The notes below the pieces were generated by a model. That model ran no database searches, was not told the origin of the DNA, and worked only from the letters and a program-made list of their open reading frames with translations. A stretch of DNA of 64,000 nt from Macrostomum lignano. Its lineage: Eukaryota. The stretch spans positions 186,001 through 250,000 of the forward strand of contig NIVC01000740.1 in the NCBI GenBank assembly GCA_002269645.1, given 5' to 3'. Shown piece after piece: positions 9,801 through 59,730 of this stretch. Within the stretch, counting starts at the first letter, position 1. Each line of letters starts with the position of its first letter. The position numbers and the translations under genes are program-made.

Positions 9801-11498
9801 GAGAAGGCGCGCTGAGAAGTCCTGGATGTGCGGCACGGGGTAGCGGTCGGGCACCGTGGCGTCGTTGAGCCGCCTGAAATCGCCACAGGGACGCCAGCCG
9901 CCCGAGGCCTTTGGCACCATGTGCAGCGGCGAGGACCAAGTGCTGTTGATCCGGCGAACGATGCCGAGCTGCTCCAGGAGCCGGAACTCCTCCTTGGCCA
10001 CCGCCAGCTTGTCCGGCGGCAGGCGGCGAGGGCGGGCGTGGACCGGCGGGCCCTGCGTCGGGATGTGGAGCTCCACCCCGTGTCGTGGCTCAGCCCGCTG
10101 GAAACTGGGCTCGGTGAGGGCAGGGAACTCGGCCAACAGCTGGCTGTACGGGTCCTCAGCGGTGGCTGCGGCGAGCTGCAGTCCGGGCCCCGCGCCGTCC
10201 AGCAGGTGCACGCTGGCGAGCGAGCGGGCGTCCAGGAGGCGCCGGTGCGGCAGGTCCACCAGCAGGCCGTGGTGCCGCAGAAAGTCGGCGCCGATCAGCG
10301 GGCGGGAGACCTCGGCTAGTATGAACGGCCAGGAGCAGCACCGGATGCCGAGGTCCAACGTGAGCTGGCGGGTGCCGAAGGTGCGGATCAGGCTGCCGTT
10401 GGCTGCGAAAAGCGGCGGGCCTGGCGAGTGCAGGCGGGCGTCGGAACCGGCGACGGGGAAAATGCTGACCTCGGCGCCGGTGTCGACCAGGAAGCGCCAG
10501 CCTGTCTGCACATCCGGGATGAGGAGCAGGCTGCTGCTGTTGCCGGCCGTCGAGCTGTTCACTGACGGCCGGCCTGCCCGTTTCCCTGGAAGCTGTACGG
10601 GGGCTCGCAGCGGCGGGCCTTCGCACCGAAGCGACGGTGAAAGAAACACAGGCCGTCGTCCGGGCGGTGTTGCCGAAGCCGGCTCTGTCTGGCGCCCTTG
10701 CTGGCCGCAGAGACCGCCGGCTGGGCTTGCTGGACTGGGTCTGCCGCCGGCTGCTGGACGGAGGCCGCGACCAGCTGCGGCCGCCGGCCGGCTGGCCCAG
10801 AGCTTGTCCACCTGCTGCGCTGCTGCCCGGGGGTCCGCGAAACTGACGGTTGTCATGGCCATGCGTACCTCCGGTGGCAGCTGTGGCAGCTCCTCGAACA
10901 GCAGGCAGGGGCGGTGTGGTTCCCCAGCAGGGCGAGCATCTCGTCCATCAGCTCGGACGGCAGCCGGTCGTCGAGGCCGGACATGCTGAGCAGGCGGCTG
11001 GCCCGCTGCTGAGGAGTCAAATCGAAAGTGCTGTTGAGGCGCTCCTTTAGCTGAGCGTACTTGTTCGCATCCGGAAGATCCTCGAGCACATCGAACAGGC
11101 GCTCTGCTGTCTGCTGGTCAAGAGCTGCGACGACCAGATGGGCGTACTATATCGTCCTTGAGTGATGCCTCTCGGGGTAACTGAGCTTTGGCCTGGATGA
11201 ACCAGGCTCGAGGCTGGGCCGCCCAAAACGTGGGCAGCTTCAGGAGGGACACAGCAGAGTCGGTTTGTTGGGCCATTGCACGAAATGGCTGCGTAGGGCT
11301 CACCAATGAAGCGCGGCTTGCGAGTTGTAGCTAAGCGAGCAAAAAGAGCTTGTGATATTTTTTCAGCATAGTTATTTATACATAACGAGAATAGGGAGGT
11401 GTGAGTCAGATCGAACTGGCTAGCTGGGCAAAACTCCCCAGCAGCCAGACGTGCAGGGGTCTGTGCAGTGTACAGGCGGGCCCCGCTCTCTCAGCCGT
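6849..11498 (-). mobile_element. Gypsy/Ty3 LTR retrotransposon, frameshifted
   Basis: gag (AVSLLKLPTFW), protease ([10 protein letters not shown]), RT (PFGLKNA, YIDD), RNase H (VDASD, YSAFDRELLA), integrase (HVDLVGPLP, SDRGSQF, NGLVERFHRQLK, GPF); matching LTRs at 6849-7423 and 11307-11498; PBS TTGGTGAGCCC next to 11306; several frameshifts. Confidence 0.95.
6949..7362. mobile_element. ~414-bp insertion inside the 3' LTR, containing a G-rich 19-bp tandem repeat
   Basis: Absent from the other LTR; flanked by GTGCAGGGG at 6940-6948 and 7363-7371; starts CAGTGGCGGCGCAGGGGGGGGG like hAT-type MITE ends. Confidence 0.65.
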
Positions 11499-12274: not shown

Positions 12275-28026
<15,752 letters not shown>

Positions 28027-33900: not shown

Positions 33901-35509
33901 TGCATGTATTGTAATAAGTTCACTGTTTTATACTCTGTTCATTTTAAATACACAAGTTGCCGCAACAAATCAGTACATTTTAGTACAGTAATAATGTACT
34001 GATATGTCGGCAACTTATTGACAAACTCGGCAAATAAAACTTTGTTTAAAAAATTCGTTGCCCACCTCCGCTTGACTAAATTCCTACATGTACATTATTT
34101 TGAGAATTGGTGTTGCCAGTGCCCATTTTATTGCCGCAGGCACTCATTAAATTTAATTTGAATTTCTGAAAACCTTTCTGCCTTTCTGCAGAGGATAAAC
34201 TATTTTATCCAATGACAATGACTCAAGAAGATTGAGAAAATTCATTAAAGACATAAACAAGCCCCTCTGAACTGCCCTGAGGCTCGATTTAAATAAATGA
34301 GACAGAAGGCGGTGGTTCTTTGTTACAAATATTTTGTATTAATACTTTTGTATTATTTTTGTATTAATACTTTTAATTGTATTTTGTATTAATACTAATA
34401 TTTGTAATACTAATTTGTAATACTAATATTTGTATTAATACTAATTGTATTGTACTTTGTATTAATACTTTTGTATTAATACTTTGTATTAATATTTTTA
34501 AGAACGAGATAATAATGGGCCAAAGGACTGCAACCGTTTGATTGCGGGTGCTTTCTATTTATAGCTTTTTGATGACGATGGGACATTCCGGAAGAAAAAT
34601 GTTCTAGAAAGAGTAGCGCGGGAATTCGAGTTACTATATTTAGAATTATATTTATCGTAGAAATTTCTAGAATGAAATGTTTACTACATGGTCAGAAAGT
34701 TTGCGAAGGTTCAGTACAAGGTCATTACGGCTTCATTTTGGTACGAGTGTACCGATAATATGATCTGCTTTACGTCGAGAAACTTAATTATTTAATAATT
34801 GATGATTAAAGTGTAATAGCAATTTAAATTAAAAGTTTAAATTAAAATAAATTTTAAGAAATTAAGATTTTAAAACTAGGATTTTTCATCAAAAGAATAA
34901 GTTAATAACAGTAATAGAATAGCAACAAACACTAATTATTTTTTGTAATTTTTTCCTTCATTGTACTATAGCCTTAAATAACATTTTTAAATATGAAAAT
35001 CAGCACCCTCTGCGCAAATTTTTAATAACAATATTTGTTGTTAATATGTACGCTCGTAAGTACGGTTGAATTTTTAAAAGAGCGCTTCGAATCACTTCGT
35101 ACTGACCTGCTTGAGGAAATTTTCCAGGCTGAACAAATTCGATTTTTGCAGTGTCCACAGCGTTTGTTCATGCACACTATGCGGCTTGCGGCAACGATCC
35201 ATTTTGTGACCAGCATCAGGTGCGATGCAGAGTTGATCCTGCCTGGCATTTGGACGGCAGTCTCGAATTCGAAGCCATTTCGAGTTTCCCTTCTTGGCCA
35301 CCAACAGCCAGGACTCCTGGCACTCATGCAGACCAGCGGGCCCGATGTCCTTTTTCAGTGTATAGTGCACCTGATCCTCCGATTCACAGCAGTTGTCGCA
35401 GCCGAGACGCCAGCAATTGCCTTGCTCGATCATCGATGTTGGAAACCTGGCCTGCGATTGAAAAGTTTTTTCATAATGACCAGAGGTTTTGGTATAGACT
35501 GTTAGACCA

Positions 35510-36095
35510 TAGACTATAGACTATTCAGTGAAGACCATAGACTATATAGAGACTATTCAGTAAAGACCATAGACTATAGAGACTATTCAGTGAAGACCAT
35601 AGACTATAGAGACTATTCAGTGAAGACCATAGACTATAGAGACTACTCAGTGAAGACCATAGACTATAGAGACTATTCAGTGAAGACCATAGACTATAGA
35701 GACTATTCAGTGAAGACCATAGACTATAGAGACTATTCAGTGAAGACCATAGACTATATAGAGACTACTCAGTGAAGACCATAGACTATAGAGACTATTC
35801 AGTGAAGACCATAGACTATAGAGACTATTCAGTGAAGACCATAGACTATAGAGACTATTCAGTGAAGACCATAGACTATAGAGACTATTCAGTGAAGACC
35901 ATAGACTATAGAGACTATTCAGTGAAGACCATAGACTATATAGAGACTATTCAGTGAAGACCATAGACTATAGAGACTATTCAGTGAAGACCATAGACTA
36001 TAGAGACTATTCAGTGAAGACCATAGACTATAGAGACTATTCAGTGAAGACCATAGACTATATAGAGACTATTCAGTGAAGACCATAGACTAAGA
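35510..36095. repeat. 30-bp minisatellite
   Basis: GTGAAGACCATAGACTATAGAGACTATTCA units. Confidence 0.97.
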
Positions 36096-36402: not shown

Positions 36403-37851
36403 TTAAACGGCTGTTGAATATAATTTACAATTTACGAGAAAACTCACAGTTTTATCATTTTCTGGCTTAAGATATTCCTTGATCCAATTTTTGTCCAGTT
36501 GATCCAGACCGGCTGCTCCAGATGCTTCCTCAATTTGTCTTCTTTTGTGCTGGGACACAAAACGTAAGCTCGGTAGCCGCTCAGCTGCCTCCTTCATCCG
36601 GCGAATGCCCTCGGCGGGATCTTGGCCGCTGACCAGGAGAAAGCGGCCGAACTCGAACCGGACGTGAAGCCTCGTCTTGTTGCTGTCTGCAGCAGCCTGC
36701 TCTTCGAGGGCTTCGTATCTCTCACGAAGTTCGACCTTGTCGACAGCTTCTTCATTCTCATTCAGACCCAGCAGCCTCAGCTGGGCCCAGGTGTTTGTTA
36801 GATCGACTTTTTGCAGCAAGTATCTGGCTTTCTGGATTCTGTCCTCGCCAGCATCTTTTGTTTTGATGAAGTACAGAGCGCACTGGAAAGCGAAATCGCT
36901 CTTCAGGAACTCGCTATCTGACAGAGTCTCGCCAGTCTTCAAAACCTTCAGCTCCTTGTTCTTGAGCCTTTTCTTGAGAATTTGGTCCTGGTCTCCTTGG
37001 ATTGGCACTTTCTTCCACTGCACCATTTTTGTCAGTCCGCGATAGACTTTGCAGCAGGTGATGTATACCTGGAGGTGCTCGCCTGCAAACTGAACCGCCT
37101 CATCTGCCAGCTGCTCAGACTTGTTGAAATGAACAGCGGAGTACGCGAGGGCCTCAGCGAACCGAGCCAGAAACATCGGGTGCTGGACTTTACATTTGTC
37201 CAGAATCCTCTTAGCCTCATCCCACAGCTCCACTCTTTCCTCTCCAATCTCAGCACTGAGGTCCGCCTGACGCCTCTGCATGGCCATCGCCTCTGCCAGA
37301 CCGAAGCGCCAGTGGAAGCTCTGGACCGACTGCTCCAGATGGTGCTCCACCTCCAGCTTCAGGGCCTCCCGGAACGCCTTCGCGGCCTCCTCCAGCTGCT
37401 GCCTCCCGAAGCTGAGCAGAGTCCAGCCTTTGGCGCCCCAGACTGAGGCCCGGACCTGCGGCTTCTGCCACTCATCAGAGAGCTTCTGAAGCATCATCTG
37501 CTCTTGCTGCTCATCTGGGTGGAATTTGTTCATCAGGTGCAGCTCCGTGGCCTCGATCAGGAAGGCCACATCCATGGTTAAAGGTGAATTAGCATTCAAA
37601 TCCAGCTTTGCTTCGTTAAGGTACTTCAGACACCGTGCTTCATCACCAGGTTGCTCCAGCATGTGCACGTAGACCAGACTCAGCAGGTGCAGCCCCTTTA
37701 GTCCGAGCTGGGTGTCCATCCTGCCTTGCAAGCTGCTGACGAGTCTGTCGATGCTCTCTGGGCTCTCGGCAAGTTTCGGCCTCCACTGGAAGTGACACGG
37801 AACCTCGCCCAGGCTCTTGAAAGACTCCGCTGGATTGTTGAGTTCCGCCAT
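36403..37851 (-). CDS. IFIT-like TPR protein (~482 aa from the Kozak ATG at 37851)
   Basis: CHFQW resembles IFIT CHFTW; GLHLLSLVYVH resembles HNLLAYVKH; GAKGWTLLSFGRQQLEEAAKAFREALKLE resembles [28 protein letters not shown]. One large coding exon behind acceptor TTTGTAG| at 37952; GCCATGG start; possible extra donor near 36447. Confidence 0.7.
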   Translation of the reverse strand: MAELNNPAESFKSLGEVPCHFQWRPKLAESPESIDRLVSSLQGRMDTQLGLKGLHLLSLVYVHMLEQPGDEARCLKYLNEAKLDLNANSPLTMDVAFLIEATELHLMNKFHPDEQQEQMMLQKLSDEWQKPQVRASVWGAKGWTLLSFGRQQLEEAAKAFREALKLEVEHHLEQSVQSFHWRFGLAEAMAMQRRQADLSAEIGEERVELWDEAKRILDKCKVQHPMFLARFAEALAYSAVHFNKSEQLADEAVQFAGEHLQVYITCCKVYRGLTKMVQWKKVPIQGDQDQILKKRLKNKELKVLKTGETLSDSEFLKSDFAFQCALYFIKTKDAGEDRIQKARYLLQKVDLTNTWAQLRLLGLNENEEAVDKVELRERYEALEEQAAADSNKTRLHVRFEFGRFLLVSGQDPAEGIRRMKEAAERLPSLRFVSQHKRRQIEEASGAAGLDQLDKNWIKEYLKPENDKTVSFLVNCKLYSTAV

Positions 37852-39599
37852 GGCGAGAACTGACTGTCTGAATGAACGGGGGGAGGGGGTAGGGTTGGGA
37901 TCAGCTCTCAGGCAGCTGTCAGACCAGAGAGTCGGACTGACATCAGTGGCTCTACAAATGAAAAAAACCGTTAGACCAAGCAAGGAGAACAATTAGTTTT
38001 ACAAAATTACGAGTAGTAATGTTGGGTTACTTCCTTAGTACTTAAGCAGTAACCCTGTTGTTATATATAAATGTTGTCTGTTGTCTCTTTCGATTGAAGC
38101 TAAAATAAACCTTGATGATGTCCGCTTTGGACGAAAAGCTTTGGCACGAGCTAATTGCACAACATTTTTCCTAGCTGCTGGTTCTATTTTTGAATCTGAC
38201 GCTGATCTCAGAAAAATAATAATGGAGGTTACTAAAAAAAGTCACGTACCGGAGCAGCAGTTGACAGATTTGACCCAATGGCTCACAAGGTACAGCCTAC
38301 CTGATCGATATTTTAGTTCCATATTTCTGCTTTAAATAGCTATCCAAATATATACCATATGGTTGAACCTGTTATGAGGGATTTTTAGTGAAGAAAACTA
38401 GCAATCAGCGCCCCCTGTTGGGGAGCCAACATGGTATGGAATAAAAATTATTGAACAAACTACATTTAGCTTCTGACTACTCCTCAGCCTTGATATCTCA
38501 GCAATTCCCCCGACCAGCCTTGACATTACAGCAATTCTCCCCAAGGGTCGCAGCATTAGCAACCTCCCCATGGCTTGACATCTTAGCAATTGATCCCCAA
38601 TGAACCTTTTGTGTTTGACATAGCTCTTCTTTTACGTTAGACATGACAAAAAGTTTTCGTTTCACTGGGGAAGGTGCAAAGTATGAAGTTAGTGCGTTTC
38701 GAGAGAGGTTGGCCCCCTGTTCCACATTTCTGTGGGACCAACAAATTTAAAGTTAAGAGACGCAGCTTTATGAGCTTCAATGACAACTCTCACAGCAGTC
38801 ATATTCATATCACAGGAGCACCCACGGGTTCGCTTGTAAATTTGCAGCTACTGTTCGAAAATGAAAAGAGCAAATTGGCGAGATCACTTACCGAAATATA
38901 GATGCTGAGAATGGCTTAGCGACTTTGTAGCACGGCTGGTTTATGTGAGTTGGTTTTGCTGGCCATTAGTTTCAATTAGTTTCAGATATAATATACAGTG
39001 TATACCATGCAGTCATACATGTACATGTACAATAGTTGGAATGGCAGACCCCCTACGCACTTGAAATCTAATTGGGGTGGGCGAGAATTTCAGATACAAA
39101 TACCAGCATATTCTGTTCGCAACTGCACGCTCTGGCTGTGATCGGTACAGTACGGAGCTAAGAGGAAGTTTGGGGAAATTGAGGGGGAACTTCATTGTTT
39201 CTCAATCCTCGTCTCCCTCCTTACGTACATGCGTGACGGAGTCATATCACGGGTCTTGGGTGATTGCGAGCTAAATTCAACTGGCTCTCTCGAGGGCCCG
39301 ATCACAATCTTGTTCAGTTACCACATAGTAAGTCTATACAAAAGAATCCACATTGACTGTACGTGTGGTAGCCCAGCATTAATGTTGATCGATAATTTCC
39401 GCCTTGTCCTAATGGCAACGCCAAGCAACGGACGCTGACGAGCTCGCTCGAACAACAGCAAGTTGAGATGCCTTCAAGTTTGAGTTAGCAACGCCGCGCC
39501 GTGCTACCCACACTCAGTGCAGGTGTTCATGCTTTACCGGCGGTGACAGGTGCGCACTGTGTTTCGTCGACTGCCTGCTGGCTCGTGCTGTCACCCGAA

Positions 39600-40829: not shown

Positions 40830-41290
40830 CATAGACACGGACAGGTGAGGTCCTTAAACACGGATACACAGGGTCAATAGACATGGACAGGAGGGGTCAG
40901 GCGGGGTCCATAGACATGGACAGGCGGGGTCAGGTGGTGTCCATAGACACGGACAGGCGGGGTCAGGTGGGGTCCATAGACACGGACTGGCGGGGTCAGG
41001 TGGGGTCCATAGACACGGACAGGCGGGGTCAGGTGGGGTCCATAGACACGGACAGGCGGGGTCAGGTGGGGTCCATAGACATGGACAGGCAGGGTCAGGT
41101 AGGCTCCATAGACACGGACAGGCGGGGTCAGGTAGGCTCCATAGACACGGACAGGCGGGGTCAGGTAGGCTTCATAGACACGGACAGGCGGGGTCAGGTA
41201 GGCTCCATAGACACGGACAGGCGGGGTCATGTAGGCTCCATAGACACGGACAGGCGGGGTCAGGTGGGGTCCATAGACATGGACAGGCGG
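40830..41290. repeat. 33-bp minisatellite overlapping the zinc-finger gene stop codon
   Basis: CCATAGACACGGACAGGCGGGGTCAGGTGGGGT units. Confidence 0.95.
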
Positions 41291-42084
41291 CGCGCGTGGG
41301 CCCGCAGGTGGCGCACCAGGTCGCCGGGGCGCTGGAAGCCGCGCGGGCAGATCACGCAGTCGAGTCGGCGACCGGCGGCGATGGCGTCTTCGTCCTCGTG
41401 CGCCCGCCGGTGGCTGTCCAGGTGGCTGCGGCGGGCGAAGCGGTGCTGGCAGAGGTCACATTGGAACGGCCGCTCGTTGGCGTGCAGGCGGCGGTGGCTC
41501 AGCAGGGAGCCGCTCTGGGCGAAGCTGCGGCCGCACTGGGCGCAGGCAAAGGGCCGCTCGCCAGAGTGCGTGCGGCGGTGGCGGGACAGGTCGGTGTTGC
41601 GCGGGAACTGCCGGCCGCACTGGTCGCAGCTGAACGGGCGCTCCTCGGTGTGCCGGGCCCGCAGATGGCTGCGCAGGTTGCTGAGGCGGGCGAAGCTGGA
41701 CGGGCACTGCTCGCAGCTGAAGGGCCGCTCGCCGCTGTGCACCCGCATGTGGCTGCTGAGGTGGCTCCGCTGGCCGAAGGCGAGGCCGCAGTCGCCGCAG
41801 CGGTGCGGTTTCGCGTGGCTCCGCCGATGCCGAGACAGCTGGCGGAGCTCCGGGAAGCGGCGCGGACAGTCCGGACAGCTGAACTGCTCGGCCGCGGCGG
41901 CCTCCATGGCGTCAGGCGGCTGGCGCTGGTCGGGCGCGGACTGCCGATCCTCAGTGTGCGGCTGCTGCTGCTGCAAGTCGGGCATGGCGGGGCGGGGGTC
42001 AGAGACCAGCTGCTCAGCCGCGGTGTGCATATATTGGGGCCGGCAGCGGCTCACATGCCGGCTCACTGTGTGGCAATGCGCCAT
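41260..42084 (-). CDS. C2H2 zinc-finger protein, 7 fingers
   Basis: Seven CxxC..HxxxH motifs with SGERPF/TEERPF linkers; exact start uncertain. Confidence 0.88.
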   Translation of the reverse strand: MAHCHTVSRHVSRCRPQYMHTAAEQLVSDPRPAMPDLQQQQPHTEDRQSAPDQRQPPDAMEAAAAEQFSCPDCPRRFPELRQLSRHRRSHAKPHRCGDCGLAFGQRSHLSSHMRVHSGERPFSCEQCPSSFARLSNLRSHLRARHTEERPFSCDQCGRQFPRNTDLSRHRRTHSGERPFACAQCGRSFAQSGSLLSHRRLHANERPFQCDLCQHRFARRSHLDSHRRAHEDEDAIAAGRRLDCVICPRGFQRPGDLVRHLRAHARRLSMSMDPT

Positions 42085-42633: not shown

Positions 42634-44973
42634 TCACACGGGCTTCGTGACCATCAGAGCAGCTGACGGGCACAGGTCCAGCGTGTACAGCGGCTTCTCC
42701 ATGTCCTCAGCGGTGAACACCCGCTTTGGGAACAGCGTCATAAGGGCGAAGTCCTCACCAGCCCGGCCGTCTGTCCGGTTGGTTCGAACGTAGCAGGCCA
42801 CCGCCGCGAGGCTCTCCTTGGCGCCGAACTGGGTAGTGAGCGGCTGGCCGCCGCCCGACAGGCGGATCTGCAGCCGGCAGGTGTCGCCGTCCGACACCGC
42901 GGCGGGGGTCGCCGCCTTCGGCAGGCTCGGGCCAGACGGCGCGCCAGCGGCAGCCGCAGGGGCAGCCGGTTGACCCGCGGCCGCTCGGCGCTCTTCGGCT
43001 TCGCGCGCCTCCATCTCGGCGCGGTCCTGCGCGTAGCGCTGCCTAATGCGCGCCAGGTACTCGCGCTGCTCCTCCTTCTCGCGCCGGCGCGCCTCGGCCT
43101 CGCGCTTTAACTCCTGCTCAGCGGACTCCTCGCGCCACTTTTTGAGGCCTTTGCCGTCCGTGCGCCGCTTCCGCTCGCGCTCCAGCTCCGCCCGGCGCTC
43201 CTCAGCCTCCCGCTCTTGGCGCTTCGCCTCCAGCTTGGCCTCCAGCTGGCGCAGCTGCTCCGCCTTCTCCTCGGCTGTCAGGGCGCGGACCTGCGGTTAG
43301 GGCGGGGCGGATTCTGCTTGAGAGCTGAGATGGGGGCGGATTTTGGTTGAGAGCTGAGATGGGGGCGGATTTTGGTTGAGAGCTGAGATGGGGGCGGATT
43401 TTGGTTGAGAGCTGAGATGGGGGCGGATTTTGGTTGAGAGCTGAGATGGGGGCGGATTTTGGTTGAGAGCTGAGATGGGGGCGGATCATCCGCTAGTTGG
43501 GGGCGGATTATCCGCTAGTTGGGGCGGATCATCCGCTAGTTGGGGGCGGATCATCCGCTAGTTGGGGGCGGATCATCCGCTAGTTGGGGGCGGATCATCC
43601 GCTAGTTGGGGGCGGATCATCCGCTAGTTGGGGGCGGATCATCCGCTAGTTGGGGGCGGATCATCTGCTAGTTGGGGGCGGATCATCCGCTAGTTGGGGG
43701 CAGTGGCGGATCTGGCATTAGATAATGAGTTCGCTGACATTAACAGCCCTTCCCCAGCTGCTCACCTCCTCCGTGGACTGGGAGAAGTTGGCGTGGCCGG
43801 TCTTGGCGGCGTGGAATTCGGCCTCGGCCGGGCTGCGGAACAACTTGCCGCAGTCGTCGCACTTCAAAGATTTTGCATCGGCATCGGTGGCCTCCGCCGA
43901 GCCGGCGGTGCCTCCCGCCGACTCTCCTGACGCCGCCGACGAAGCAGCTGCCGCGTTGGCTGCCGGCGCGGGCTCCGGTTCCGGGATCGGGTCGTCAATA
44001 TCCGGGTCATCCTGGTGGCTGGACAGCCTGCGGAATTTCCGAGGAAAAAGCAGAGTTAGGCAATGTTGGCATTGCCGAGTCAGCTGGGGTAAGATCGCTA
44101 CTTGGTTAGAGGCGATTCTCAGCTGAGGTCAGATGGCGGTTCTCATGGTGAGATCGGGGGGCGATTCTCATGGTGAGATCAGGGGAGGATTCTCATGGTG
44201 AGATCAGGGGGCGATTCTCATGGTTAGATCAGTGGGCAATTCTCATGGTGAGATCAGGGGGCGATTCTCATGGTGAGATCAGGGGGCGATTCTCATGGTG
44301 AGATCAGGGGGTGATTCTCATGGTGAGATCAGGGGGCGATTCTCATGGTGAGATCAGGGGGTGATTCTCATGGTGAGATCAGGGGGCGATTCTCATGGTG
44401 AGATCAGGGGGCGATTCTCATGGTGAGATCAGGGGGTGATTCTCATGGTGAGATCAGGGGGCGATTCTCATGGTGAGATCAGGGGGTGATTCTCATGGTG
44501 AGATCAGGGGAGGATTCTCATGGTGAGATCAGGGGGCGATTCTCATGGTGAGATCAGTAGGCGGTTCTCAGGTGGTATCAGGTGTCAGTAGGGTCAGGGT
44601 GGATCCTCGGTTGATGTCAGAGAGTGACTTAGGTCTATCAAAATTCAAAGCCAAAATCGACAAACTAAATAAGTTATTACATTGTTACGATATTACTTGT
44701 AATATTAGTATACTCGTACTGATTAAACCAGCAAAAACATGAGTTTGAGAAACTTTAAGTAATACACTGGACTTACCAGTCCATTGCTGCTTCAATCCCT
44801 TTGTTCCCTGACTTCAACAGAGCTTTTTTTCTAAAAAAAAAAGACAAAATAACGATTTCACTGGCAATGTAGCTTGTAGACATAGCAAGTGATTTATTTG
44901 GCATTTCTTACGCTCTGATTTCGGAGAAACCCATGTCTAAGAGCATGCTCAGGTTGGAGTCATTGGATGACAT
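42634..44973 (-). CDS. UBXN1: UBX domain protein 1 (UBA - C2H2 - coiled coil - UBX), 4 exons, 344 aa
   Basis: Exons 44973-44912, 44830-44777, 44027-43766, 43290-42634. UBA [80 protein letters not shown]. Confidence 0.92.
43310..43700. repeat. Adjacent 29-bp and 22-bp minisatellites in UBXN1 intron 3
   Basis: GAGCTGAGATGGGGGCGGATTTTGGTTGA then GGGGGCGGATCATCCGCTAGTT. Confidence 0.93.
44140..44570. repeat. 25-bp minisatellite in UBXN1 intron 2
   Basis: TTCTCATGGTGAGATCAGGGGGCGA units. Confidence 0.95.
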
Positions 44974-45257
44974 GGCAGATTCGACTGTTGCATGAAGTAT
45001 TGGATTTGAAAGCTCATTTGTTTAATTGACTTAATTTGAAGGTTTAAGATAAATTATAATATCTGGTTCTTGTATTTTACAAGTAAAAATTATAATTTAT
45101 AATTAGTTAGAAAAAATGTATGCATTATATGTACATGCAATGTGTGTAAGGCCTTGTCTATTTCGTTCAATTAATAATGCTTTTTGCACAAATTGAATTT
45201 GCACCAAATCTCTGAAAAATATTTTGTTGAAATATTTATACATGTAATTCAACAGGC

Positions 45258-45450
45258 CAGGGGGTTGTAGCCTAGAGGTTAGAAAGTTGGACTCACGACT
45301 GAAACTGAAAAGTCGGGGGTTCAATTCCCAATCCCACTGGAACAATTTGTGTTCATGAGCAAGACACTTAACTCTGCATTGCTTCAGTTCACCCAGCTGT
45401 AAAATGGGTGCCAGCATTAGCTGGGGTAATTGAGGGTGTGTGTGACAACC
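45258..45450 (+). mobile_element. tRNA-headed CORE-type SINE, decayed
   Basis: A box TAGCCTAGAGG, B box GGGTTCAATTCCC, then GAGCAAGACACTTAACTCTGCATTGCTTCAGTTCACCCAGCTGTAAAATGGG resembling the MIR/CORE domain. Confidence 0.6.
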
Positions 45451-46164
45451 CCCAAGTCCTTGGACTGAACAGCTATACTTACTTGACAATGACAAATTTT
45501 TTAAAGTAAGATGGGGAAAGCCTCTTTTTATTCTTTATTTTTAAGCAAAAATCTAATTTTCTAGGCGATTTCAAATCTGCACAAAAACTAAAAAACAAAC
45601 TTTTTGTTTAAATACTCATATTTTTCTAAATATTTTTGTGATTTTTTGTTTTAAATGAACCAAGAAAATAGTATAAATAGATGCAAATTTTCAGACAAGA
45701 GAATCAACCTTGCCCACTGTGGTTACATATAATCAATAATAAACTAGGCCTAGCAGTTAACAAGAAGTGTTCCAAGTGAAATTAAATCTTTGAGAATTCA
45801 ATTTGACTTGGTTAATTTTCTGAGTAAAGTAGAAGGATTATAAGAATATACCATATATACTACTGAGAAGTAGAAAACCATAGTAAAAGAGACAAAGTAG
45901 ATCTTGAAGCAGACATATAGAGGCCATGACCTTCTAATCTCAGAAATGCCCAGGACTAGAAAGATCAATACATGCAATCCATATACTAGTAGAATATATA
46001 CTGCTCAGATCAGATATTTATATATATAACACTACTAGAATTAATTAAGAATGCTACCAATGGAATAATAATGCTACCAGTAAGAAATAGGAAATACTAA
46101 GAACTATTACTTAGACTAATACTTAGATATATACTCAGACTTAGACAAATATTCAGTTACATAT

Positions 46165-46880: not shown

Positions 46881-49800
46881 TAGAGGTCGGACGGGATCCC
46901 GATCCCGATCCCGAAACCTCGGGATCCCGAGGAAAATTGGATTCCCGCGGGATCGGGATCCCGACCCTAAAAAAAACGGGAATCGGGAACAGGTCCTTTG
47001 GTTCCAAATTTGTAGAATTGATGATTGCTTTCATGCATTTTGTTTTACTTGTACTTGTTACATCGTTACTTTTTTGGTTACAAAACTTTGCATTCATTCT
47101 CTCGTGTTTTACCTCTTGATCTTAACATTGTTAAAGTTATAAATATTCCATTGATATTTACAAACTTTGTAGAACATATAAATCAAATCGGATTAGTATG
47201 CATGGTTGCGCAATGATTAGTGAATAGAAATTACAGAAGCTCAATACATGCGCAATCTCTGCTGCGATTAAAATTTGATCACTCCCTTTTCACTCCATTA
47301 TAAGAACACAAAAACTTTTTTTTCTCCCTTATTTTAGCACGTCTAGGCCTGTGATTGTGTGCGCAAAGGTTATATAACTTGCGCAATCGTTTATTAATTT
47401 ATTTTCACTGTTTCAGTTTCATCATTTTTGGGCGTGAAATCTGAGGCGTGAATTCAGTAGTTAGTGTTAACACATGTTGCTTGTAATGTTGTATCTTAAA
47501 TAGCTTTTTACTTTTTGTGTAATGTAAATAATGTTTTTTTAAATGTTATGATCGTTTGTTTTATTTTTAATTGCTAAAATAAAATAAATAAACCGAATGT
47601 CTTTAGACAGGATTTACATCAATATTTTCCATTCCAAATGCTTTCCAATTACTTAACAAATCACTTATCAAGTCATCATTAATTCATTCATCAGTCGTTG
47701 TGCAGGTGGAAAGTTGCAAACTTCTGTTGTTTATTTCTCAATAAAAAGGCAGTCGGTGGATGCTACAAAAATGGTACATGTACATTTACGAGTGTAACTT
47801 CCTGATTTGCCTCACAGAGATGGAGATCTTAGTGATATGGATAACGTGAGTGCCATCGGCAGAAACTGTTCGCTTTAAACAAGCAACAAAAAACAGGATA
47901 TAAGAAAGCACAACAGCAGACAAAGTAGGCAATATTTTACTTTTGCACGTTTAATTATTTTACTTTGAATTAGTGTTGAAGTAGGACATCGTGATCCACC
48001 TTACAAATATAGATAAATTGTGTTATATTTTAAAAGGCTAAAATTTCATATCACTTTCTATCAAATCTACAAATTTGTTAAATGTTTAAGGAATAAGGTC
48101 CTCAGGGATTTTATATTGCTTTTTATAATGTGGATCGCAACTTCCTTTTTAGCGCCAATCTAAATTGAAAAAGTAACTGCGTAAGCCGTAAAGTAAAAAA
48201 TGCCTAAAAATCCGTAACAAACGTCTCTAGCATTGGCAAAGTGCATCTTCGAAATTATTTTCCGGCATTGAAGTCAACAAATGGCAAATTAATCTTACAC
48301 AAAACAATCTTTTCTAGCGAATCAGGTGACAGAGAAGCCCGCCTATCTGAGAAAACATTTCCAGCAATACTAAATAGCCTTTCACTAGAAACGCTAGATG
48401 CAGGAATGCAAAATAGTTTTTTCACTAAGGGAATAATCGAAGTCCGAAGCCTTTCAGTTGCCTTTGTAGACCAGTAGATAAGTGGATCACTACTGGCTGG
48501 CTCCAGTTTTGAGGTTAGAAACTCCGTCAACAGCTCTTCAATGCAGCTGCTGGGCTGCAGCACTGAGTTGGCATTAAAATTACTGAACAGATCGTCCAGA
48601 AGACGGCGCTTTGGAGGAGGGGGCTGGTCAAAAGCTTCCCTCGTGCATTCATCATCCTCTGGAGAAGGCGAACTTGCAAAGTTGCCATTGCCAGAAGTTA
48701 CTTCTTGTTCTTGTCTACTATTATGACCAGTGACAGTAGTAGTCGTAGAACAGAATTCTAACACAATCTTCTTCTTCTGGTCTCTCTCAGCAGCAGGGAA
48801 AAAAGCAAGCTTGTAACGCGGATCCAGGGCTGTTGCCAGGATGCAGTCCAATCTGATAGGGATGTCAGAAAATCGCGAATTGACACCACGTACCAGTGAA
48901 TCAAACAGCGACCTCACACCCGAAATTGCATCCTTATCGAGTGCTGCTTTTTCGAGAAACTTTTGCAACAGTGCAACCATTGGAATCAAATATGAGATGC
49001 TGGTTGACTCTTTGCTAACTTCCAGAGTTAGCTCTTCAAAAATTGAAAGCAGATTAACTACTTTTTCGATTATGGTAAATTCATTGCTCGAAATTTCTTC
49101 GAAATCCGATCGATCAGCAACGAAGGCAGAGATAGCACTTCGCTGTTCCAAAACTCTTTGCAGCATGTGTAATGTAGAGTTCCAACGAGTTGGAACATCA
49201 CACTTGAGCTTGTGCTGTGGCAGCTCCAATGCTTTCTGAAGCTTTTCAAATCGGCCTTGAGATGTTGTTGAATGGTGCATGGAGCTAACAAAGCGTCGGC
49301 ATTTGCCTATAATTGCCTCAACACACGGTTGCTGCTTAAGTGCATCTTGCACAATCAGATTCAACTTGTGAGCTGCACAGCTCACACTTCCTCCGATATT
49401 CTCCGAGAAATTGGAGTCAGCAGTAGCACCATTGGCTGAAGAAGGTAGCATTGTGCGCACTGCCTTCAGCATGTTAGCAGCATTGTCAGTAACAATTGCT
49501 ATTGTTTTACTTTCGATACGCCAGTCAGCGAAAATCTCAGTCAGCACATTTGCAATGTTAGAAGAAGTGTGAACTTCAATCAGATGTTGCATAGCCAGTG
49601 TTGTGCTAAATCTCTCTAGCTTGCAGACTTGAGCTTGGGTGTTGTCGTTGCAACAATCAGCCTCAGAGACGGAAAGCATTTCTTTGATTCCGTGGACTGT
49701 GAGTCCAAGGAAGGACAGGCCTTTTTCAGACCAAATGTCACAGGTAACTGCCACTGAGGTCAAGTCGTCAAGCTGCTGCCTGATGTTCTTCTTGGCACAG

Positions 49801-52212
49801 TTGTACACATCATTGAGCTTTTCGCGGTAAAATTTTTCAGACTTAATTGTATACTGTGGTGATGCAATCTTCATCAGGCCTTGAAATCCTGCTTCTTGAA
49901 CCATGGTCCATGGTTGACCATCCAACAATATCATACGAACAATTGCTAAGTCAAGTTCCTTTGACCTGGAATCCTCGATGTCCCATGGACGGCTTTTCTT
50001 AATTGATTGTTGCAATGTTGGCTGGAAAAGCCCTTCAGCTTTTGAGCTCTCCTTCAGTTTCTGGCTGTCTCTCTGCTGTTTAATTTGTTGGAGCTCTTCA
50101 TATAAGTCCTTATGGCATGATTGTAAATGGCGAAGAGCCCCACTTGTAGATCCAGTGGAACACAGTAACATTTTTCCACAACCTGGGCTTAAGCATTTAG
50201 CAAAATCTTGTCCATTGTGCACTTCCTTTTTAAAAAAGCGCCAGACTGGACTTGAGTTTATACCAGACATTAGGTTGATAACTTGATGTTAATTTGACTT
50301 GTATATGGTGTAGCACGTGTGCTGAAAATGGAAAATGATGAAACATTAGTTATACATGTTTACAATCTACATTATAAGAAAATATATAAAAAATATAGGC
50401 ACCTAATGGTTTTATAATTATTTTTATAGTTTGTTACTGAAAGTACTAAACATAAATAGTTTAAATCAAATGGCAATAAACTAGGCCTATTTAGTGACTA
50501 GTAATGATAATGAGATAATAATAGCAAGTTGATTGTTGAATAATAAAAAATTCACTGAATTATTTGAATAAAAACTATAGATTGAAAAATGAAATAGCAT
50601 GCTACGCTAGGATATTCAATGCCTATGCCCTTATTCACTATTTTTTCAATAAGATTTTTAGAGACATTAAATACAGGACAAAGGCCTAGTATTATTCTAA
50701 GGAATAGGCTAGATTACGTTAAAATCAATTGAAGAATTTAATTACAAAAATAATAATCAAACTGAACTCCTAACTCTATTCTATTAAATAATTCTTAATA
50801 TTGACTTGACAATAAGTCAGAAAATTTTGAAATTCAAACAAATAGTCACACAAAAAGACAAGTGATAAAATCAAAAAAATTGCAAAAAGGTCTCTACTCT
50901 ATATAACATATTGATAAAAAACATTTGCAAAATTAAAAGTATTAAATTTATTTAACAGATTAAATCCCATTTTTTAAAAATAAATCTTTTTGATAAAAAA
51001 GAATTTTTTTATTGACAAATAAGCTACAATTTATACTACAATTTATTCTGTTATTGATGAATAGAATACAATTGATTAAGTCAATTGTCATTGAACATAG
51101 TGATAATGAAGTAACCACTTTATCTAATCTGGCATATTTCTAGCTAGCTAACTTTAACTTTTTTTGCATTTTTTGTTAATAAACACTAAATAGTTTTCAA
51201 TGGAATATACACCATCACCATACTGCTATATAGTATATGCTATGAACGTTCAATAAATTATTTTGACTTCAAATTTGTGCTTAGCAAACAGTTCTAAGAA
51301 TTCCCATAGTGAAACAAACACAAATAACTAATAATTTCAAAATTTGTAGCCAAAATAATTTGTTGATTTCAGGTATCAATTATAAACAAATTATATATGT
51401 ACTAAATATACAATCTACATTTGCTTGTTTGTAACGGTTGACAGACTTGAAATTCTTGACCATCATTATTACGAAATGCAAATAAATATAGAAATTTACA
51501 ATCCTATATACTAAAAATGAGTTGATTGTTTGTACGCACCACGCAATCGATTAGAGAAAAACTGGCTGGATTTTCTCTTTTACTTTTACTTTTACTTCTA
51601 CTTTTTTCAATTTTTTTTTCAGTTGATATATAAACTTGATAATTAACATAATATCGTGTCTATTATGTTAATTATTGAAAGTCCCAAGCAATCAGTTTCA
51701 GCATCAGTTTCAATTTTTCTAGCTTTCTATGCTAAAATATTTTAGGCCAAGGTTTATACATTCCATATATACTACATTTTTTCTCTATTTATTTAATTTA
51801 TAAAATATATTAATTTAAAAGTAAAAACATTAATTGTCTAATGTCTGTGTACTGTACATACATTACTATCTATATAATTATTTTTATATTATTTACTTAA
51901 AGGAAATTGATTAGGACTTTTTTATTATAAATTCAAAAGTTTCTATTTATATGCATTTAAATATATTAATAGTAATTATAAATAATAAAGCATAAACTTA
52001 AGAGCCTAGACAAATTTTTGTTTATGTTATATTGTGTATCTATTCTTTATAGCTGTATATGAATATACAAATATACAAACTACGGCTACGGTATATTTTA
52101 ACTTTAAAGACCTGATCCCGATTCCCGAATCCCGATCCCGATCCCGATCCCGAGAAAAAAATTATTCCCGATCCCGATCCCGCCCGAAGATTTCAATCCC
52201 GTCCGACCTCTA
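46881..52212 (-). mobile_element. Full-length hAT DNA transposon (5332 bp)
   Basis: Perfect 17-bp TIR TAGAGGTCGGACGGGAT; 8-bp TSD ATTGGGAT at 46873-46880 and 52213-52220; (ATCCCG)n subterminal repeats at both ends. Confidence 0.95.
48255..50270 (-). CDS. hAT transposase with BED finger, uninterrupted 671-aa ORF
   Basis: BED (SPVWRFF..C..C..LRHLQSCH), TCDIWS, VTDNAANM, CAAHKLNL, TRWNST, SVSSERLFS. Confidence 0.93.
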   Translation of the reverse strand: MSGINSSPVWRFFKKEVHNGQDFAKCLSPGCGKMLLCSTGSTSGALRHLQSCHKDLYEELQQIKQQRDSQKLKESSKAEGLFQPTLQQSIKKSRPWDIEDSRSKELDLAIVRMILLDGQPWTMVQEAGFQGLMKIASPQYTIKSEKFYREKLNDVYNCAKKNIRQQLDDLTSVAVTCDIWSEKGLSFLGLTVHGIKEMLSVSEADCCNDNTQAQVCKLERFSTTLAMQHLIEVHTSSNIANVLTEIFADWRIESKTIAIVTDNAANMLKAVRTMLPSSANGATADSNFSENIGGSVSCAAHKLNLIVQDALKQQPCVEAIIGKCRRFVSSMHHSTTSQGRFEKLQKALELPQHKLKCDVPTRWNSTLHMLQRVLEQRSAISAFVADRSDFEEISSNEFTIIEKVVNLLSIFEELTLEVSKESTSISYLIPMVALLQKFLEKAALDKDAISGVRSLFDSLVRGVNSRFSDIPIRLDCILATALDPRYKLAFFPAAERDQKKKIVLEFCSTTTTVTGHNSRQEQEVTSGNGNFASSPSPEDDECTREAFDQPPPPKRRLLDDLFSNFNANSVLQPSSCIEELLTEFLTSKLEPASSDPLIYWSTKATERLRTSIIPLVKKLFCIPASSVSSERLFSIAGNVFSDRRASLSPDSLEKIVLCKINLPFVDFNAGK

Positions 52213-52689: not shown

Positions 52690-53277
52690 GCGAAACCCCA
52701 ACAATTGCTTCATGCTCAGCCTGCAACGATGCCAAAATATCTGTGGCCCAAGCAGGCATTCAAGCTCTGCATTAGCACAAGAAGGGCACTAAGCACATTG
52801 TTGCTGTTGCTGTTACCATGAAGTTGCAGCACTCTATCAAGCATTTTTGCCAGGATCCTAGTCATTTCGTCAACTGCCATTTCGTCAACTGGACACATCG
52901 TCAACCCGTTCCCCATATTGGTCGTTTCGTCAACCAACCAATAGGATACTTTCAAAGCTTGGTTATTTCGTCAACTGTTCAATGGGACGATGTCAACTTT
53001 TGGTCACTTCGTCAACTGCCAATAATACACGCCCCGCATGCAGCCCTCCTCCTTTCTCATTCTGGGCTTGGGACCAGACAATGGCGGAGTTACTGCCACA
53101 AAGATGCAGTTTGTATGGTAAAAAAAGGAAAATGCATTGCACAAAATCACAAAGATCACAAAGGCCACCACAAAGGTCACAATCAAATATAAAGCTGAAG
53201 ATATGCGCAGAGTGTACAGTACACTTATCCACTTCTACACTGTATACACTAATACCTATATACACTTTAGGTACTAG

Positions 53278-53310
<33 letters not shown>

Positions 53311-58164: not shown

Positions 58165-59730
<1,566 letters not shown>

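What the first reader, a model, noticed from the sequence alone, without database searches (positions are those of the whole stretch)
36403..37851. IFIT-like antiviral TPR protein in an invertebrate genome
Seen: a single-exon ~482-aa helical protein with the CHF.W N-terminal motif and the GW.LL..G..Y/L E.A..F..AL block in IFIT-like order and spacing. Known: vertebrate IFITs are ~470-490-aa TPR proteins encoded almost wholly by one large exon and bind 5'-ppp or cap0 RNA. Inference: an interferon-independent IFIT-type RNA sensor. If the host does SL trans-splicing, its cap specificity would be of particular interest. The similarity was judged by eye.
Basis: partly seen in the sequence, partly recalled or inferred. 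Interest (0 to 1): 0.72.

Follow-up and report, generated by a model that had tools for sequence, protein, structure and literature searches.

The report
IFIT-like TPR gene in a flatworm
An intact gene with no gene call on record in the flatworm Macrostomum lignano encodes a true relative of the vertebrate antiviral IFIT proteins, a family thought to exist only in jawed vertebrates, but this copy lacks most of the residues that IFIT1 and IFIT5 use to grip the 5' end of viral RNA.

Summary
Window 36403-37851 (minus strand) is an intact 482-codon ORF with a good start context and coding-type GC3. The CHFQW and GW..LL..G....E.A...F..AL motifs sit at IFIT-like spacing.

Homology to IFITs is well supported:
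- In a 1.84-billion-protein library the protein hits only an uncharacterised invertebrate family and NCBI-named vertebrate IFIT1-like and IFIT5-like proteins.
- The family profile ranks human IFIT5, IFIT1 and IFIT2 first in the PDB.
- hhalign against vertebrate IFITs gives 98.9% probability, E 2.5e-17.
- An AlphaFold model built without any vertebrate sequence (pLDDT 82) has IFIT5 and IFIT1 as its top nine Foldseek matches (TM 0.4-0.7).

The host is Macrostomum lignano (100% identity to contig NIVC01000740.1), which does SL trans-splicing. No gene is on record for this ORF.

The functional inference is weakened. The positions matching IFIT1 R38, K151, R187 and R255 (IFIT5 K150, R186, R253) are S, S, M and I here. 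Most family members keep basic residues at several of them. The equivalents of W146, K257, R260 and Q288 are kept.

Verdict: a real IFIT-superfamily member with a remodelled pocket, probably not a canonical ppp/cap0 RNA sensor.

The parts
36403..37851 (-). Coding ORF of the IFIT-like protein (482 aa plus stop). No gene is on record here in M. lignano assembly GCA_002269645.1.
   Evidence: ORF. (GC3 0.66 against flanks 0.34-0.43). (identical to contig NIVC01000740.1; no called gene on record at L008 14120-15568).
37783..37797 (-). N-terminal CHFQW motif (residues 19-23). It aligns with the CHFTW motif of IFIT5, IFIT1 and the vertebrate IFITs, and with the CHF.W motif of the invertebrate family.
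37012..37824 (-). Residues 10-280. This is the region with direct sequence similarity to the invertebrate family and to vertebrate IFITs (IFIT subdomains I-II).
   Evidence: phmmer stretches 5-271. (tblastn). (hhalign 11-419).
37360..37428 (-). The GW-LL-FG ... E.A...F..AL block (residues 142-164). W143 matches IFIT5 W146. S147 occupies the IFIT5 K150 / IFIT1 K151 position.
37270..37302 (-). Residues 184-194 (GLAEAMAMQRR). M191 sits at the IFIT5 R186 / IFIT1 R187 position. R194 sits at a position that is basic in every invertebrate family member.
37036..37071 (-). Residues 261-272 (QVYITCCKVYRG), aligned with the IFIT Y..RY..K..R motif. I264 stands for R253/R255 and T265 for Y254. K268 and R271 keep IFIT5 K257 and R260.
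36541..37011 (-). Residues 281-437. This is the C-terminal TPR half, modelled with block pLDDT of about 64-93 (mostly 72-93) and matching IFIT over the full length by structure. Q323 aligns with IFIT5 Q288.
36406..36540 (-). Residues 438-482, a low-confidence C-terminal tail. It contains a donor-like GTGAG at 36442-36447, so the last 14 codons could be intron read-through.
   Evidence: pLDDT below 50.. (M. lignano donor motif).
37852..37992 (-). Upstream extension of the open frame with no ATG (P/S/T-rich), most likely 5' UTR. It holds an acceptor-like ...tttgtAG at 37952-37960 and ...cattcAG about 25 nt before the ATG. These are possible cis- or SL trans-splice acceptors.
   Evidence: Motifs from PMC8629364. 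Inference only.

Best explanation
The ORF is a real, intact, single-ORF gene of the free-living flatworm Macrostomum lignano with no gene call on record. It encodes a short (IFIT-sized) member of a previously uncharacterised invertebrate protein family that shares ancestry with the vertebrate IFITs.

The protein is predicted to fold into the same all-helical TPR arrangement as IFIT1 and IFIT5. That arrangement has an N-terminal subdomain carrying the CHF.W motif, a second subdomain carrying the GW..LL motif, and a C-terminal TPR subdomain.

Shown here: the homology, the predicted fold and the host.

Inferred: how it works. This copy has lost the basic residues that hold the 5'-triphosphate or cap bridge in IFIT1 and IFIT5. 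It keeps the tryptophan of the GW motif and the K/R/Q residues that contact downstream RNA backbone in IFIT5. It is therefore most likely a derived paralogue with a remodelled central pocket. Either it binds single-stranded RNA through end chemistry other than ppp/cap0, or it acts as a non-sensing partner or regulator, as some vertebrate IFIT paralogues do. It is not likely to be a canonical ppp/cap0 sensor.

The M. lignano long-form paralogue PAA70671.1 (P0024) and the partial model PAA70660.1 (P0005) carry basic residues at all seven pocket positions compared. Another long form, PAA92423.1 (P0004), has Cys at the K150 position. P0024 and P0005 are the better candidates for IFIT1/5-like RNA end binding in this animal.
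For: Real gene: an intact 482-codon ORF, a gccATGG start context and GC3 0.66 against AT-rich flanks.

Host: window 31260-51970 is 100% identical over 20,711 bp to M. lignano GCA_002269645.1 contig NIVC01000740.1. No gene call is on record at the ORF.

Homology:
- phmmer against 1.84e9 representatives gives only 20 hits. These are 15 invertebrate family members (best 9e-14) and five vertebrate proteins at 1e-7 to 5e-5. Four of the five are NCBI-named IFIT5-like or IFIT1-like, from two frogs, a stingray and milkfish; the fifth is an unnamed electric-eel protein with the IFIT motifs.
- P0014 and P0009 match human IFIT1 and IFIT5 at 7e-51 and 1e-52.
- The family profile against the PDB puts IFIT5, IFIT1 and IFIT2 first at about 2e-8, collinear from the CHF motif. 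Natural non-IFIT TPR proteins score above 0.03.
- hhalign of the family against vertebrate IFITs gives 98.9% probability and E 2.5e-17, covering query residues 11-419.

Fold: AF2 with an MSA of invertebrate sequences only gave pLDDT 81.7 and pTM 0.78. The Foldseek top nine PDB hits are IFIT5 and IFIT1 (E 2e-6 to 7e-5, TM 0.40-0.74). The next hit, the OGT TPR domain, has TM 0.39.

Pocket: in the alignment table, the query has S40, S147, M191 and I264 at IFIT1 R38, K151, R187 and R255. It keeps W143, K268, R271 and Q323. The family is K/R at the R38 position in 12 of 16 members and at the R187 position in 16 of 17. P0005 and P0024 are basic at all seven positions compared; P0006 and P0011 are basic at six and seven of the positions they cover.

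Family context: M. lignano has long paralogues. Another invertebrate contig carries three tandem copies. In an NJ tree the query sits next to the M. lignano paralogues and apart from the vertebrate clade.
Against: - There is no expression evidence, and no gene call is on record for the ORF in the deposited assembly.
- No close orthologue was found, so purifying selection could not be measured.
- Pocket inferences rest on alignments at 20-26% identity. For the first helix, MAFFT and hhalign differ by four residues; with hhalign, R36 would occupy the IFIT1 R38 position.
- Vertebrate IFITs themselves vary at the K150 and R253 positions: T/S and C/Q/S in some of the hits. Loss of these residues therefore does not by itself exclude RNA binding.
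- The electrostatics of the model could not be computed because coordinates are not returned.
- TPR repeats are known to inflate profile-profile scores. The non-repeat CHF.W motif and the collinearity argue against that here.
Confidence: 0.62

Rival explanations
1. The protein is a working IFIT1/IFIT5-type sensor that clamps the 5' end of non-self RNA (ppp or cap0) in a basic tunnel. In a trans-splicing host it might tell TMG-capped or SL-bearing self mRNA from foreign RNA.
For: - The fold and motifs are IFIT-like over the full length.
- W143 (the IFIT1 W147 position), K268, R271 and Q323 are kept.
- Other basic residues lie close to the lost positions: R36, R44, R150, R193 and R194.
- The host is confirmed to use SL trans-splicing with a TMG-capped SL RNA (PMC8629364).
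- Relatives keep a complete basic set.
Against: - The three residues with the largest electrostatic contribution in IFIT5 are K150, R253 and R186 (PMC9677429). They are S, I and M here. The IFIT1 R38 position is S by MAFFT.
- The first 280 residues have net charge -8. This is weak evidence, because a frog IFIT5-like fragment is -14.
- There are no binding, expression or induction data.
Confidence: 0.2
2. It is an unexpressed or decaying paralogue. A duplicated short copy of the family has lost the C-terminal domain and the pocket residues, and it is still open only because the loss is recent.
For: - No gene is on record at the locus in the deposited assembly.
- It lacks the C-terminal domain that the long forms carry, and no such domain lies elsewhere in the window.
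- It departs from its own family's consensus at three conserved basic positions.
- It sits in a repeat- and transposon-rich stretch.
Against: - 482 codons are open with no stop or frameshift, and the start context is good.
- GC3 is clearly above the flanks.
- Hydrophobic core and TPR signature positions are kept well enough for a confident model through about residue 437; per-10-residue block pLDDT is mostly 72-97.
- IFIT-sized short forms occur elsewhere in the family (P0017, 426 aa).
- At 25% identity to its nearest paralogues the copy is old, and an old dead copy would not stay open.
Confidence: 0.13
3. It is a generic TPR scaffold protein whose likeness to IFITs comes only from the degenerate TPR repeat, with no shared ancestry.
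For: - Pfam gives only sub-threshold TPR_2 and TPR_16 matches.
- The protein alone hits IFIT5 in the PDB at only E 0.23.
- TPR proteins are a known source of false profile-profile matches. Earlier 'IFIT-like' invertebrate candidates proved to be other TPR proteins (PMC3688568).
Against: - Among 1.84e9 proteins, which include very large numbers of TPR proteins, the only non-family hits are vertebrate IFITs.
- The shared CHF.W motif is not part of the TPR consensus, and it sits at the same distance from the GW block.
- The alignment is collinear over about 400 residues.
- IFITs out-rank all other TPR structures in both sequence-profile and structure searches.
Confidence: 0.05

Closest known systems
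Human IFIT5 (PDB 3ZGQ, 4HOQ-4HOT) and IFIT1 (5UDI, 5W5H, 5W5I, 6C6K)
   Same: - Length: 482 aa here, against 482-residue (IFIT5) and 479-residue (IFIT1) PDB chains.
- An all-helical TPR architecture.
- An N-terminal CHF.W motif, and a GW..LL.FG...A...F..AL block at the same spacing.
- The K..YR motif (IFIT5 K257 and R260) and the Q288 equivalent.
- They are the best structural matches, TM 0.57-0.70 over the whole chain.
   Different: - About 15% identity in the structural alignment.
- The K150/K151, R186/R187 and R253/R255 equivalents are S, M and I. Y250 and Y254 are Q and T. IFIT1 R38 is S or R depending on the alignment.
- The host has no known interferon system (background knowledge).
- The gene stands alone in the window rather than in an IFIT cluster. 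Any RNA binding is untested.
Vertebrate IFIT paralogues that do not sense RNA ends themselves (for example IFIT3 as partner of IFIT1; PDB 6C6K, 9MK9)
   Same: A member of the family whose pocket residues differ from IFIT1 and IFIT5 and which may work through partners. The vertebrate hits P0012, P0014, P0015 and P0018 also vary at the K150 or R253 positions.
   Different: No partner is known. No C-terminal interaction motif could be tested. This is a functional analogy only.
Uncharacterised invertebrate 'CHF.W.PE' TPR family (M. lignano PAA92423.1, PAA70660.1, PAA70671.1; unnamed ENA contig proteins P0001-P0003, P0006-P0008, P0010, P0011, P0013, P0016, P0017, P0019, P0020)
   Same: These are the closest sequence relatives (E 9e-14 to 6e-4, 20-30% identity). 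They share the N-terminal 250-280 residues and the single-ORF gene structure.
   Different: - Most members are 860-1090 aa and carry an extra conserved C-terminal domain with no Pfam or PDB match. The window's protein lacks it.
- Most keep K/R at the IFIT1 R38 and R187 positions, which the window's protein does not.

Membership tests
[quoted passage not shown] | Significant sequence similarity to bona fide IFITs that is stronger than to other TPR families | tested here: met
   phmmer E 1e-7 to 5e-5 to vertebrate IFITs, four of five NCBI-named IFIT5-like or IFIT1-like, in a 1.84e9-protein library with no other TPR family hit. The family profile ranks IFIT5, IFIT1 and IFIT2 first in the PDB. hhalign gives 98.9% probability, E 2.5e-17.
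IFIT superfamily | N-terminal CHF(T)W motif followed, about 125 residues later, by the GW.LL.FG block | tested here: met
   C19-HFQ-W23 and G142-W143...G149, a spacing of 123 against 127 in IFIT5.
IFIT superfamily | An IFIT-type three-dimensional arrangement of TPR subdomains over the whole chain | tested here: met
   On a predicted model only. AF2 pLDDT is 81.7 with no vertebrate sequence in the MSA and no templates. The Foldseek top nine hits are IFIT5 and IFIT1, with TM up to 0.70.
IFIT1/IFIT5-type 5'-RNA end sensors | Basic residues that hold the triphosphate or cap bridge (IFIT1 R38, K151, R187, R255; IFIT5 K150, R186, R253) | tested here: not met
   The query has S40 (or R36 by hhalign), S147, M191 and I264. 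K257, R260, Q288 and W146 equivalents are kept. Residue lists come from PMC9677429 and PMC13197388.
IFIT1/IFIT5-type 5'-RNA end sensors | An enclosed positively charged tunnel in the structure | not testable with these tools
   Model coordinates are not returned, so no electrostatics or cavity analysis was possible.
IFIT1/IFIT5-type 5'-RNA end sensors | Binding of ppp-RNA or cap0-RNA | not testable with these tools
   This needs biochemical or structural data.
IFIT genes (vertebrate definition) | Induction by interferon or virus through ISRE elements in the promoter | not tested
   The promoter position is unknown and no expression data are at hand.
IFIT genes (vertebrate definition) | Two-exon structure, with exon 1 carrying the ATG plus two nucleotides (PMC3688568) | tested here: inconclusive
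   The ORF has its own ATG at an IFIT-like distance from the CHF motif. The frame is open for 47 codons upstream. An AG at 37952-37953 lies in the phase such an intron would need, but there is no RNA evidence.
IFIT genes (vertebrate definition) | Tandem clusters of paralogues | tested here: not met
   There is only one copy in the 64-kb window. Three tandem copies are seen for the family on another invertebrate contig.
Invertebrate CHF.W.PE TPR family, long form | A conserved C-terminal domain (invariant R-E-H, two W, and A-H-.-A-A-E-F-A-E) | tested here: not met
   It is absent from the ORF, and tblastn found it nowhere else in the window.

The most novel reading that the evidence does not exclude
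IFITs did not arise with interferon in jawed vertebrates. They descend from an older bilaterian family of cytosolic TPR clamp proteins that already bound RNA 5' ends. In a flatworm whose own mRNAs carry either m7G caps or TMG-capped spliced leaders, members of this family (this gene or its long paralogues) tell self from non-self RNA ends without interferon. The unknown C-terminal domain of the long forms would be the effector.
Probability: 0.15. Interest if true: 0.85.

Novelty: new variant of a known kind. Interest (0 to 1): 0.6.

Why it matters
The reference study of IFIT evolution found IFIT genes only in jawed vertebrates. It concluded that the family arose together with interferon, and its invertebrate candidates turned out to be unrelated TPR proteins (PMC3688568). 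A zebrafish ISG survey also places IFITs among the 'young' families.

Here a flatworm gene, its M. lignano paralogues and relatives on other invertebrate contigs pass sequence, profile and structure tests of homology with IFITs. If that holds, the IFIT fold predates interferon, as was recently argued for Mx (PMC11789081). M. lignano is a transgenic model that trans-splices about 30% of its genes. It would therefore be a natural place to ask what an IFIT-type protein does where self mRNAs carry two kinds of cap.

The particular copy in this window is the less promising member for that question, because its phosphate-binding residues are gone.

Tried and rejected
- Word-indexed protein search with the single protein returned 0 hits. 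With the family alignment it returned only P0007. The index seems to be swamped by TPR words.
- The single-sequence AF2 model was too poor to use (pLDDT 44).
- Pfam on the query gave nothing above threshold. Rfam and tRNA scans of the window were empty.
- Exact look-ups of the query protein found nothing.
- The JGI metagenome scan failed with the alignment because it had no conserved stretch. With the protein it found no relative.
- tblastn of the long-form proteins against the window found no C-terminal domain exon.
- The clathrin exon search gave only about 70% identity to fish, bird, fly and nematode proteins, which meant only 'non-vertebrate metazoan'. The host was finally identified through an exact match of the hAT transposase ORF and then the zinc-finger gene.
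- M. lignano P0024 alone does not hit IFITs in the PDB.
- The C-terminal domain of the long forms has no Pfam or PDB relative by sequence.
- Three literature searches were badly framed, with min_terms too low, and gave nothing useful. The well-framed searches found no paper on an invertebrate IFIT.
- I considered that the spliced leader's terminal ATG could supply the start codon. At both acceptor-like sites it would be out of frame with the ORF, so I dropped the idea.
Full report
**1. The observation**

Window 36403-37851 on the minus strand is an open frame of 482 codons plus a stop. It starts at an ATG in a gccATGG context. The frame stays open, with no further ATG, for another 47 codons upstream to 37992.

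- CHFQW is at residues 19-23.
- GW-LL-FG....E.A...F..AL is at residues 142-164.
- They lie 123 residues apart, against 127 in human IFIT5 (alignment printed).

The ORF has GC 0.54 and GC3 0.66, while its flanks have GC 0.34-0.43. The clathrin and tRNA-synthetase exons in the same window have GC3 of 0.65-0.85. This is coding sequence of the host, not a chance ORF.

**2. What it is related to**

The weaker searches gave little.
- Pfam gives nothing above threshold.
- The protein alone hits only IFIT5 in the PDB, and only weakly (E 0.23), although the match is collinear from the CHF motif.
- The word-indexed search found nothing.

The exhaustive phmmer search of 1.84 billion representatives found 20 proteins at E of 0.001 or better. 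They fall into two groups.

- Fifteen belong to an uncharacterised family with a shared N-terminal CHF.W.PE motif. Five family sequences (three of the representatives plus cluster members) are 'hypothetical proteins' of Macrostomum lignano, one further cluster member is a 4203-aa M. lignano UniRef entry named AMP deaminase (probably a fused model), and the rest come from unnamed eukaryotic contigs in ENA assemblies.
- Five are vertebrate proteins. Four of them NCBI calls IFIT5-like or IFIT1-like: from the frogs Phyllobates and Dendropsophus, the stingray Hypanus and the milkfish Chanos. The fifth is an unnamed electric-eel protein with the same motifs.
- Two of the five were checked and match human IFIT1 and IFIT5 at 7e-51 and 1e-52.

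No other TPR family appears among the 20 hits. That matters, because TPR proteins are extremely common in such a library.

Profile-level tests agree.
- A profile of the invertebrate family puts IFIT5, IFIT1 and IFIT2 first in the PDB at about 2e-8.
- Designed consensus TPRs follow, matching through single repeats only. Natural non-IFIT TPR proteins score above 0.03.
- hhalign of the family against the vertebrate IFITs gives 98.9% probability and E 2.5e-17, collinear over query residues 11-419.

**3. Structure**

Folded alone, the protein gave a useless model (pLDDT 44). With the 16-sequence invertebrate alignment, and with no vertebrate IFIT and no template, AlphaFold2 gave pLDDT 81.7 and pTM 0.78. 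The model is helical throughout, and only residues 438-482 are unreliable.

Foldseek against the PDB returns IFIT5 and IFIT1 chains as the first nine hits.
- E-values run from 2e-6 to 7e-5.
- TM is 0.57-0.70 for seven of the nine, with alignment columns spanning the whole chain. Two IFIT1 entries (5udi_A, 6c6k_A) give about 0.40-0.43.
- The next hit is the OGT TPR domain at TM 0.39.

That condition is not met.

**4. The host**

A clathrin exon in the window is only about 70% identical to fish, bird, fly and nematode clathrins. That pointed to a fast-evolving non-vertebrate animal.

- The intact hAT transposase ORF at 48255-50270 has exact matches on two contigs of M. lignano assembly GCA_002269645.1.
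- Walking from there, window 31260-51970 is 100% identical over 20,711 bp to contig NIVC01000740.1, positions 217260-237970, in reverse orientation.
- The gene calls on record for that stretch are the hAT gene, a UBA/UBX gene and a C2H2 zinc-finger gene. Nothing is called over the IFIT-like ORF.

M. lignano trans-splices a 35-nt leader onto about 30% of its genes. SL RNAs carry a trimethylguanosine cap (PMC8629364).

**5. Gene structure**

- The long M. lignano paralogues and the copies on contig L001 read as essentially uninterrupted ORFs. A single coding exon is therefore normal for this family.
- The query's ATG lies 18 residues before the Cys of the CHF motif. IFIT5 has 17. This ATG is most likely the true start.
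- Two acceptor-like AGs lie between 37992 and 37852. A donor-like GTGAG lies 42 nt before the stop.
- The ORF holds two GT[GA]AG in all, close to my own rough chance estimate of about three. I give these sites no weight without RNA data.
- The spliced leader ends in ATG. At both acceptor-like sites that ATG would be out of frame with the ORF.

**6. How it may work**

The residues that matter for RNA 5'-end binding were taken from papers, not from memory.
- For IFIT5, substitutions at T37, Q41, K150, R186, Y250, R253, Y254, R260, Q288 and F337 have strong effects. K150, R253 and R186 contribute most electrostatically (PMC9677429).
- For IFIT1, the phosphates are held by R38, K151, R187 and R255, and W147 is part of the cap pocket (PMC13197388).

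Four motif anchors allow a gap-free mapping: the first long helix, GW.LL.FG, W..G......R, and Y..RY..K..R.

| IFIT position | Residue in this protein |
|---|---|
| IFIT5 W146 | W143 (kept) |
| IFIT5 K257 | K268 (kept) |
| IFIT5 R260 | R271 (kept) |
| IFIT5 Q288 | Q323 (kept) |
| IFIT5 K150 / IFIT1 K151 | S147 |
| IFIT5 R186 / IFIT1 R187 | M191 |
| IFIT5 R253 / IFIT1 R255 | I264 |
| IFIT5 Y250 | Q261 |
| IFIT5 Y254 | T265 |
| IFIT1 R38 | S40 by MAFFT, R36 by hhalign |

Its own family mostly disagrees with it.
- The R38 position is K/R in 12 of 16 members.
- The R187 position is K/R in 16 of 17.
- P0005 and P0024 (M. lignano) are basic at all of the R38, Q42, K150, R186, R253, K257 and R260 positions. 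P0006 and P0011 are basic at six and seven of the positions they cover.

So the family as a whole looks like it could hold an RNA 5' end as IFIT1 and IFIT5 do, but this copy has changed the pocket.

Two cautions apply. Identities are only 20-26%. Some genuine vertebrate IFITs also vary at the K150 and R253 positions.

I could not compute a surface because the tools return no coordinates. My reading is that this is a derived paralogue. Either it has altered RNA-end specificity, or it acts as a non-sensing partner. It is not a canonical ppp/cap0 sensor.

**7. Family context**

- A crude NJ tree puts the query beside the M. lignano P0005/P0024 pair inside the invertebrate group, with the vertebrate IFITs as a separate clade.
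- Most invertebrate members are 860-1090 aa. They add a C-terminal domain with invariant R-E-H, two tryptophans and an A-H-.-A-A-E-F-A-E motif. This domain has no Pfam or PDB relative by sequence.
- The window's protein lacks that domain, and tblastn finds none elsewhere in the window.
- One ENA contig carries three tandem copies.

**8. Comparison with what is known**

The reference study of IFIT evolution found IFITs only in jawed vertebrates. It showed that its acorn-worm, lancelet, lamprey and hagfish candidates were unrelated TPR proteins (PMC3688568). A zebrafish ISG study lists IFITs among the 'young' families.

I found no paper in the held library that reports an invertebrate IFIT homologue or links Macrostomum with IFITs. 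The library lacks most subscription papers, so prior description elsewhere cannot be excluded.

I file the gene under the IFIT superfamily. I do not file it under the IFIT1/IFIT5 class of RNA-end sensors, because that class's defining residues were tested and not met.

**9. Verdict**

- Novelty: a new variant of a known kind.
- Interest: 0.6. The homology is solid and runs against the accepted origin of IFITs. However, function is unknown and this copy is the least sensor-like of the family.

Noticed in passing
window 46881-52212 (transposase ORF 48255-50270, minus strand): A hAT DNA transposon with an intact 671-aa transposase (ZBED1-like and hAT dimerisation domains). A second copy on another M. 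lignano contig (NIVC01001888.1) is 99.8% identical over 5.3 kb with different flanks, so the insertions look recent.
   Followed up: partly
long-form relatives P0002, P0004, P0016, P0019, P0024, P0025 (about the last 290 residues); alignment A3: A conserved C-terminal domain with invariant R-E-H, two W and A-H-.-A-A-E-F-A-E motifs. It is shared by M. lignano and the unnamed invertebrate contigs and has no Pfam or PDB match by sequence. It may be the effector part of the family. The window's protein lacks it.
   Followed up: partly
L001 239-2575, 4314-7248, 10001-12006 (ENA ERZ25074608 contig ctg182779): Three tandem, essentially intron-free copies of the IFIT-like family on an unidentified AT-rich invertebrate contig, next to retroelement fragments. 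The clustering recalls vertebrate IFIT loci.
   Followed up: partly
window 35504-36092: A 30-bp-unit minisatellite (about 19 copies, 95% matches) starts about 300 bp downstream of the gene's stop. The window holds more than 20 such arrays, including several inside the clathrin gene (for example 18877-19382, 24253-24704, 25834-26454).
   Followed up: no
window 17123-27228 (plus strand): A clathrin heavy chain gene with unusually long exons. One exon tested is only about 70% identical to vertebrate, insect and nematode clathrins.
   Followed up: partly
window 41260-41970 and about 42634-44988 (minus strand): The upstream neighbours on the same strand are a C2H2 zinc-finger gene (236 aa as annotated) and a UBA/UBX-domain gene (349 aa). 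A 33-bp tandem array (40871-41290) overlaps the 3' end of the zinc-finger ORF and reads as a long repeat ORF on the plus strand.
   Followed up: no
window 7448-11000 (minus strand): A very GC-rich (up to 68%) LTR-retrotransposon pol region with integrase zinc-binding and rve core domains. Several long overlapping ORFs on both strands reflect the composition.
   Followed up: no
window 53274-54644 (minus strand): A MULE-type transposase ORF (456 aa). A 12-bp tandem array encodes an (RRSL)n stretch near its N-terminus, and it has a poly-Q tail.
   Followed up: no
window 45309-45473 against L002 14830-14994: A 165-bp repeat is shared at 90% identity with the flank of the long paralogue gene PAA92423.1 on another M. 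lignano contig. It is probably a dispersed short repeat family.
   Followed up: no
window 58264-59720: About 1.4 kb of purine-only GA/GAGGAGA low-complexity sequence (GC skew 0.70, AT skew 0.60), which gives spurious long ORFs on the minus strand.
   Followed up: no
window 4331-5128 (minus strand): An exon of a class I Glu/Gln-tRNA synthetase, covering the end of the catalytic domain and the anticodon-binding domain.
   Followed up: no
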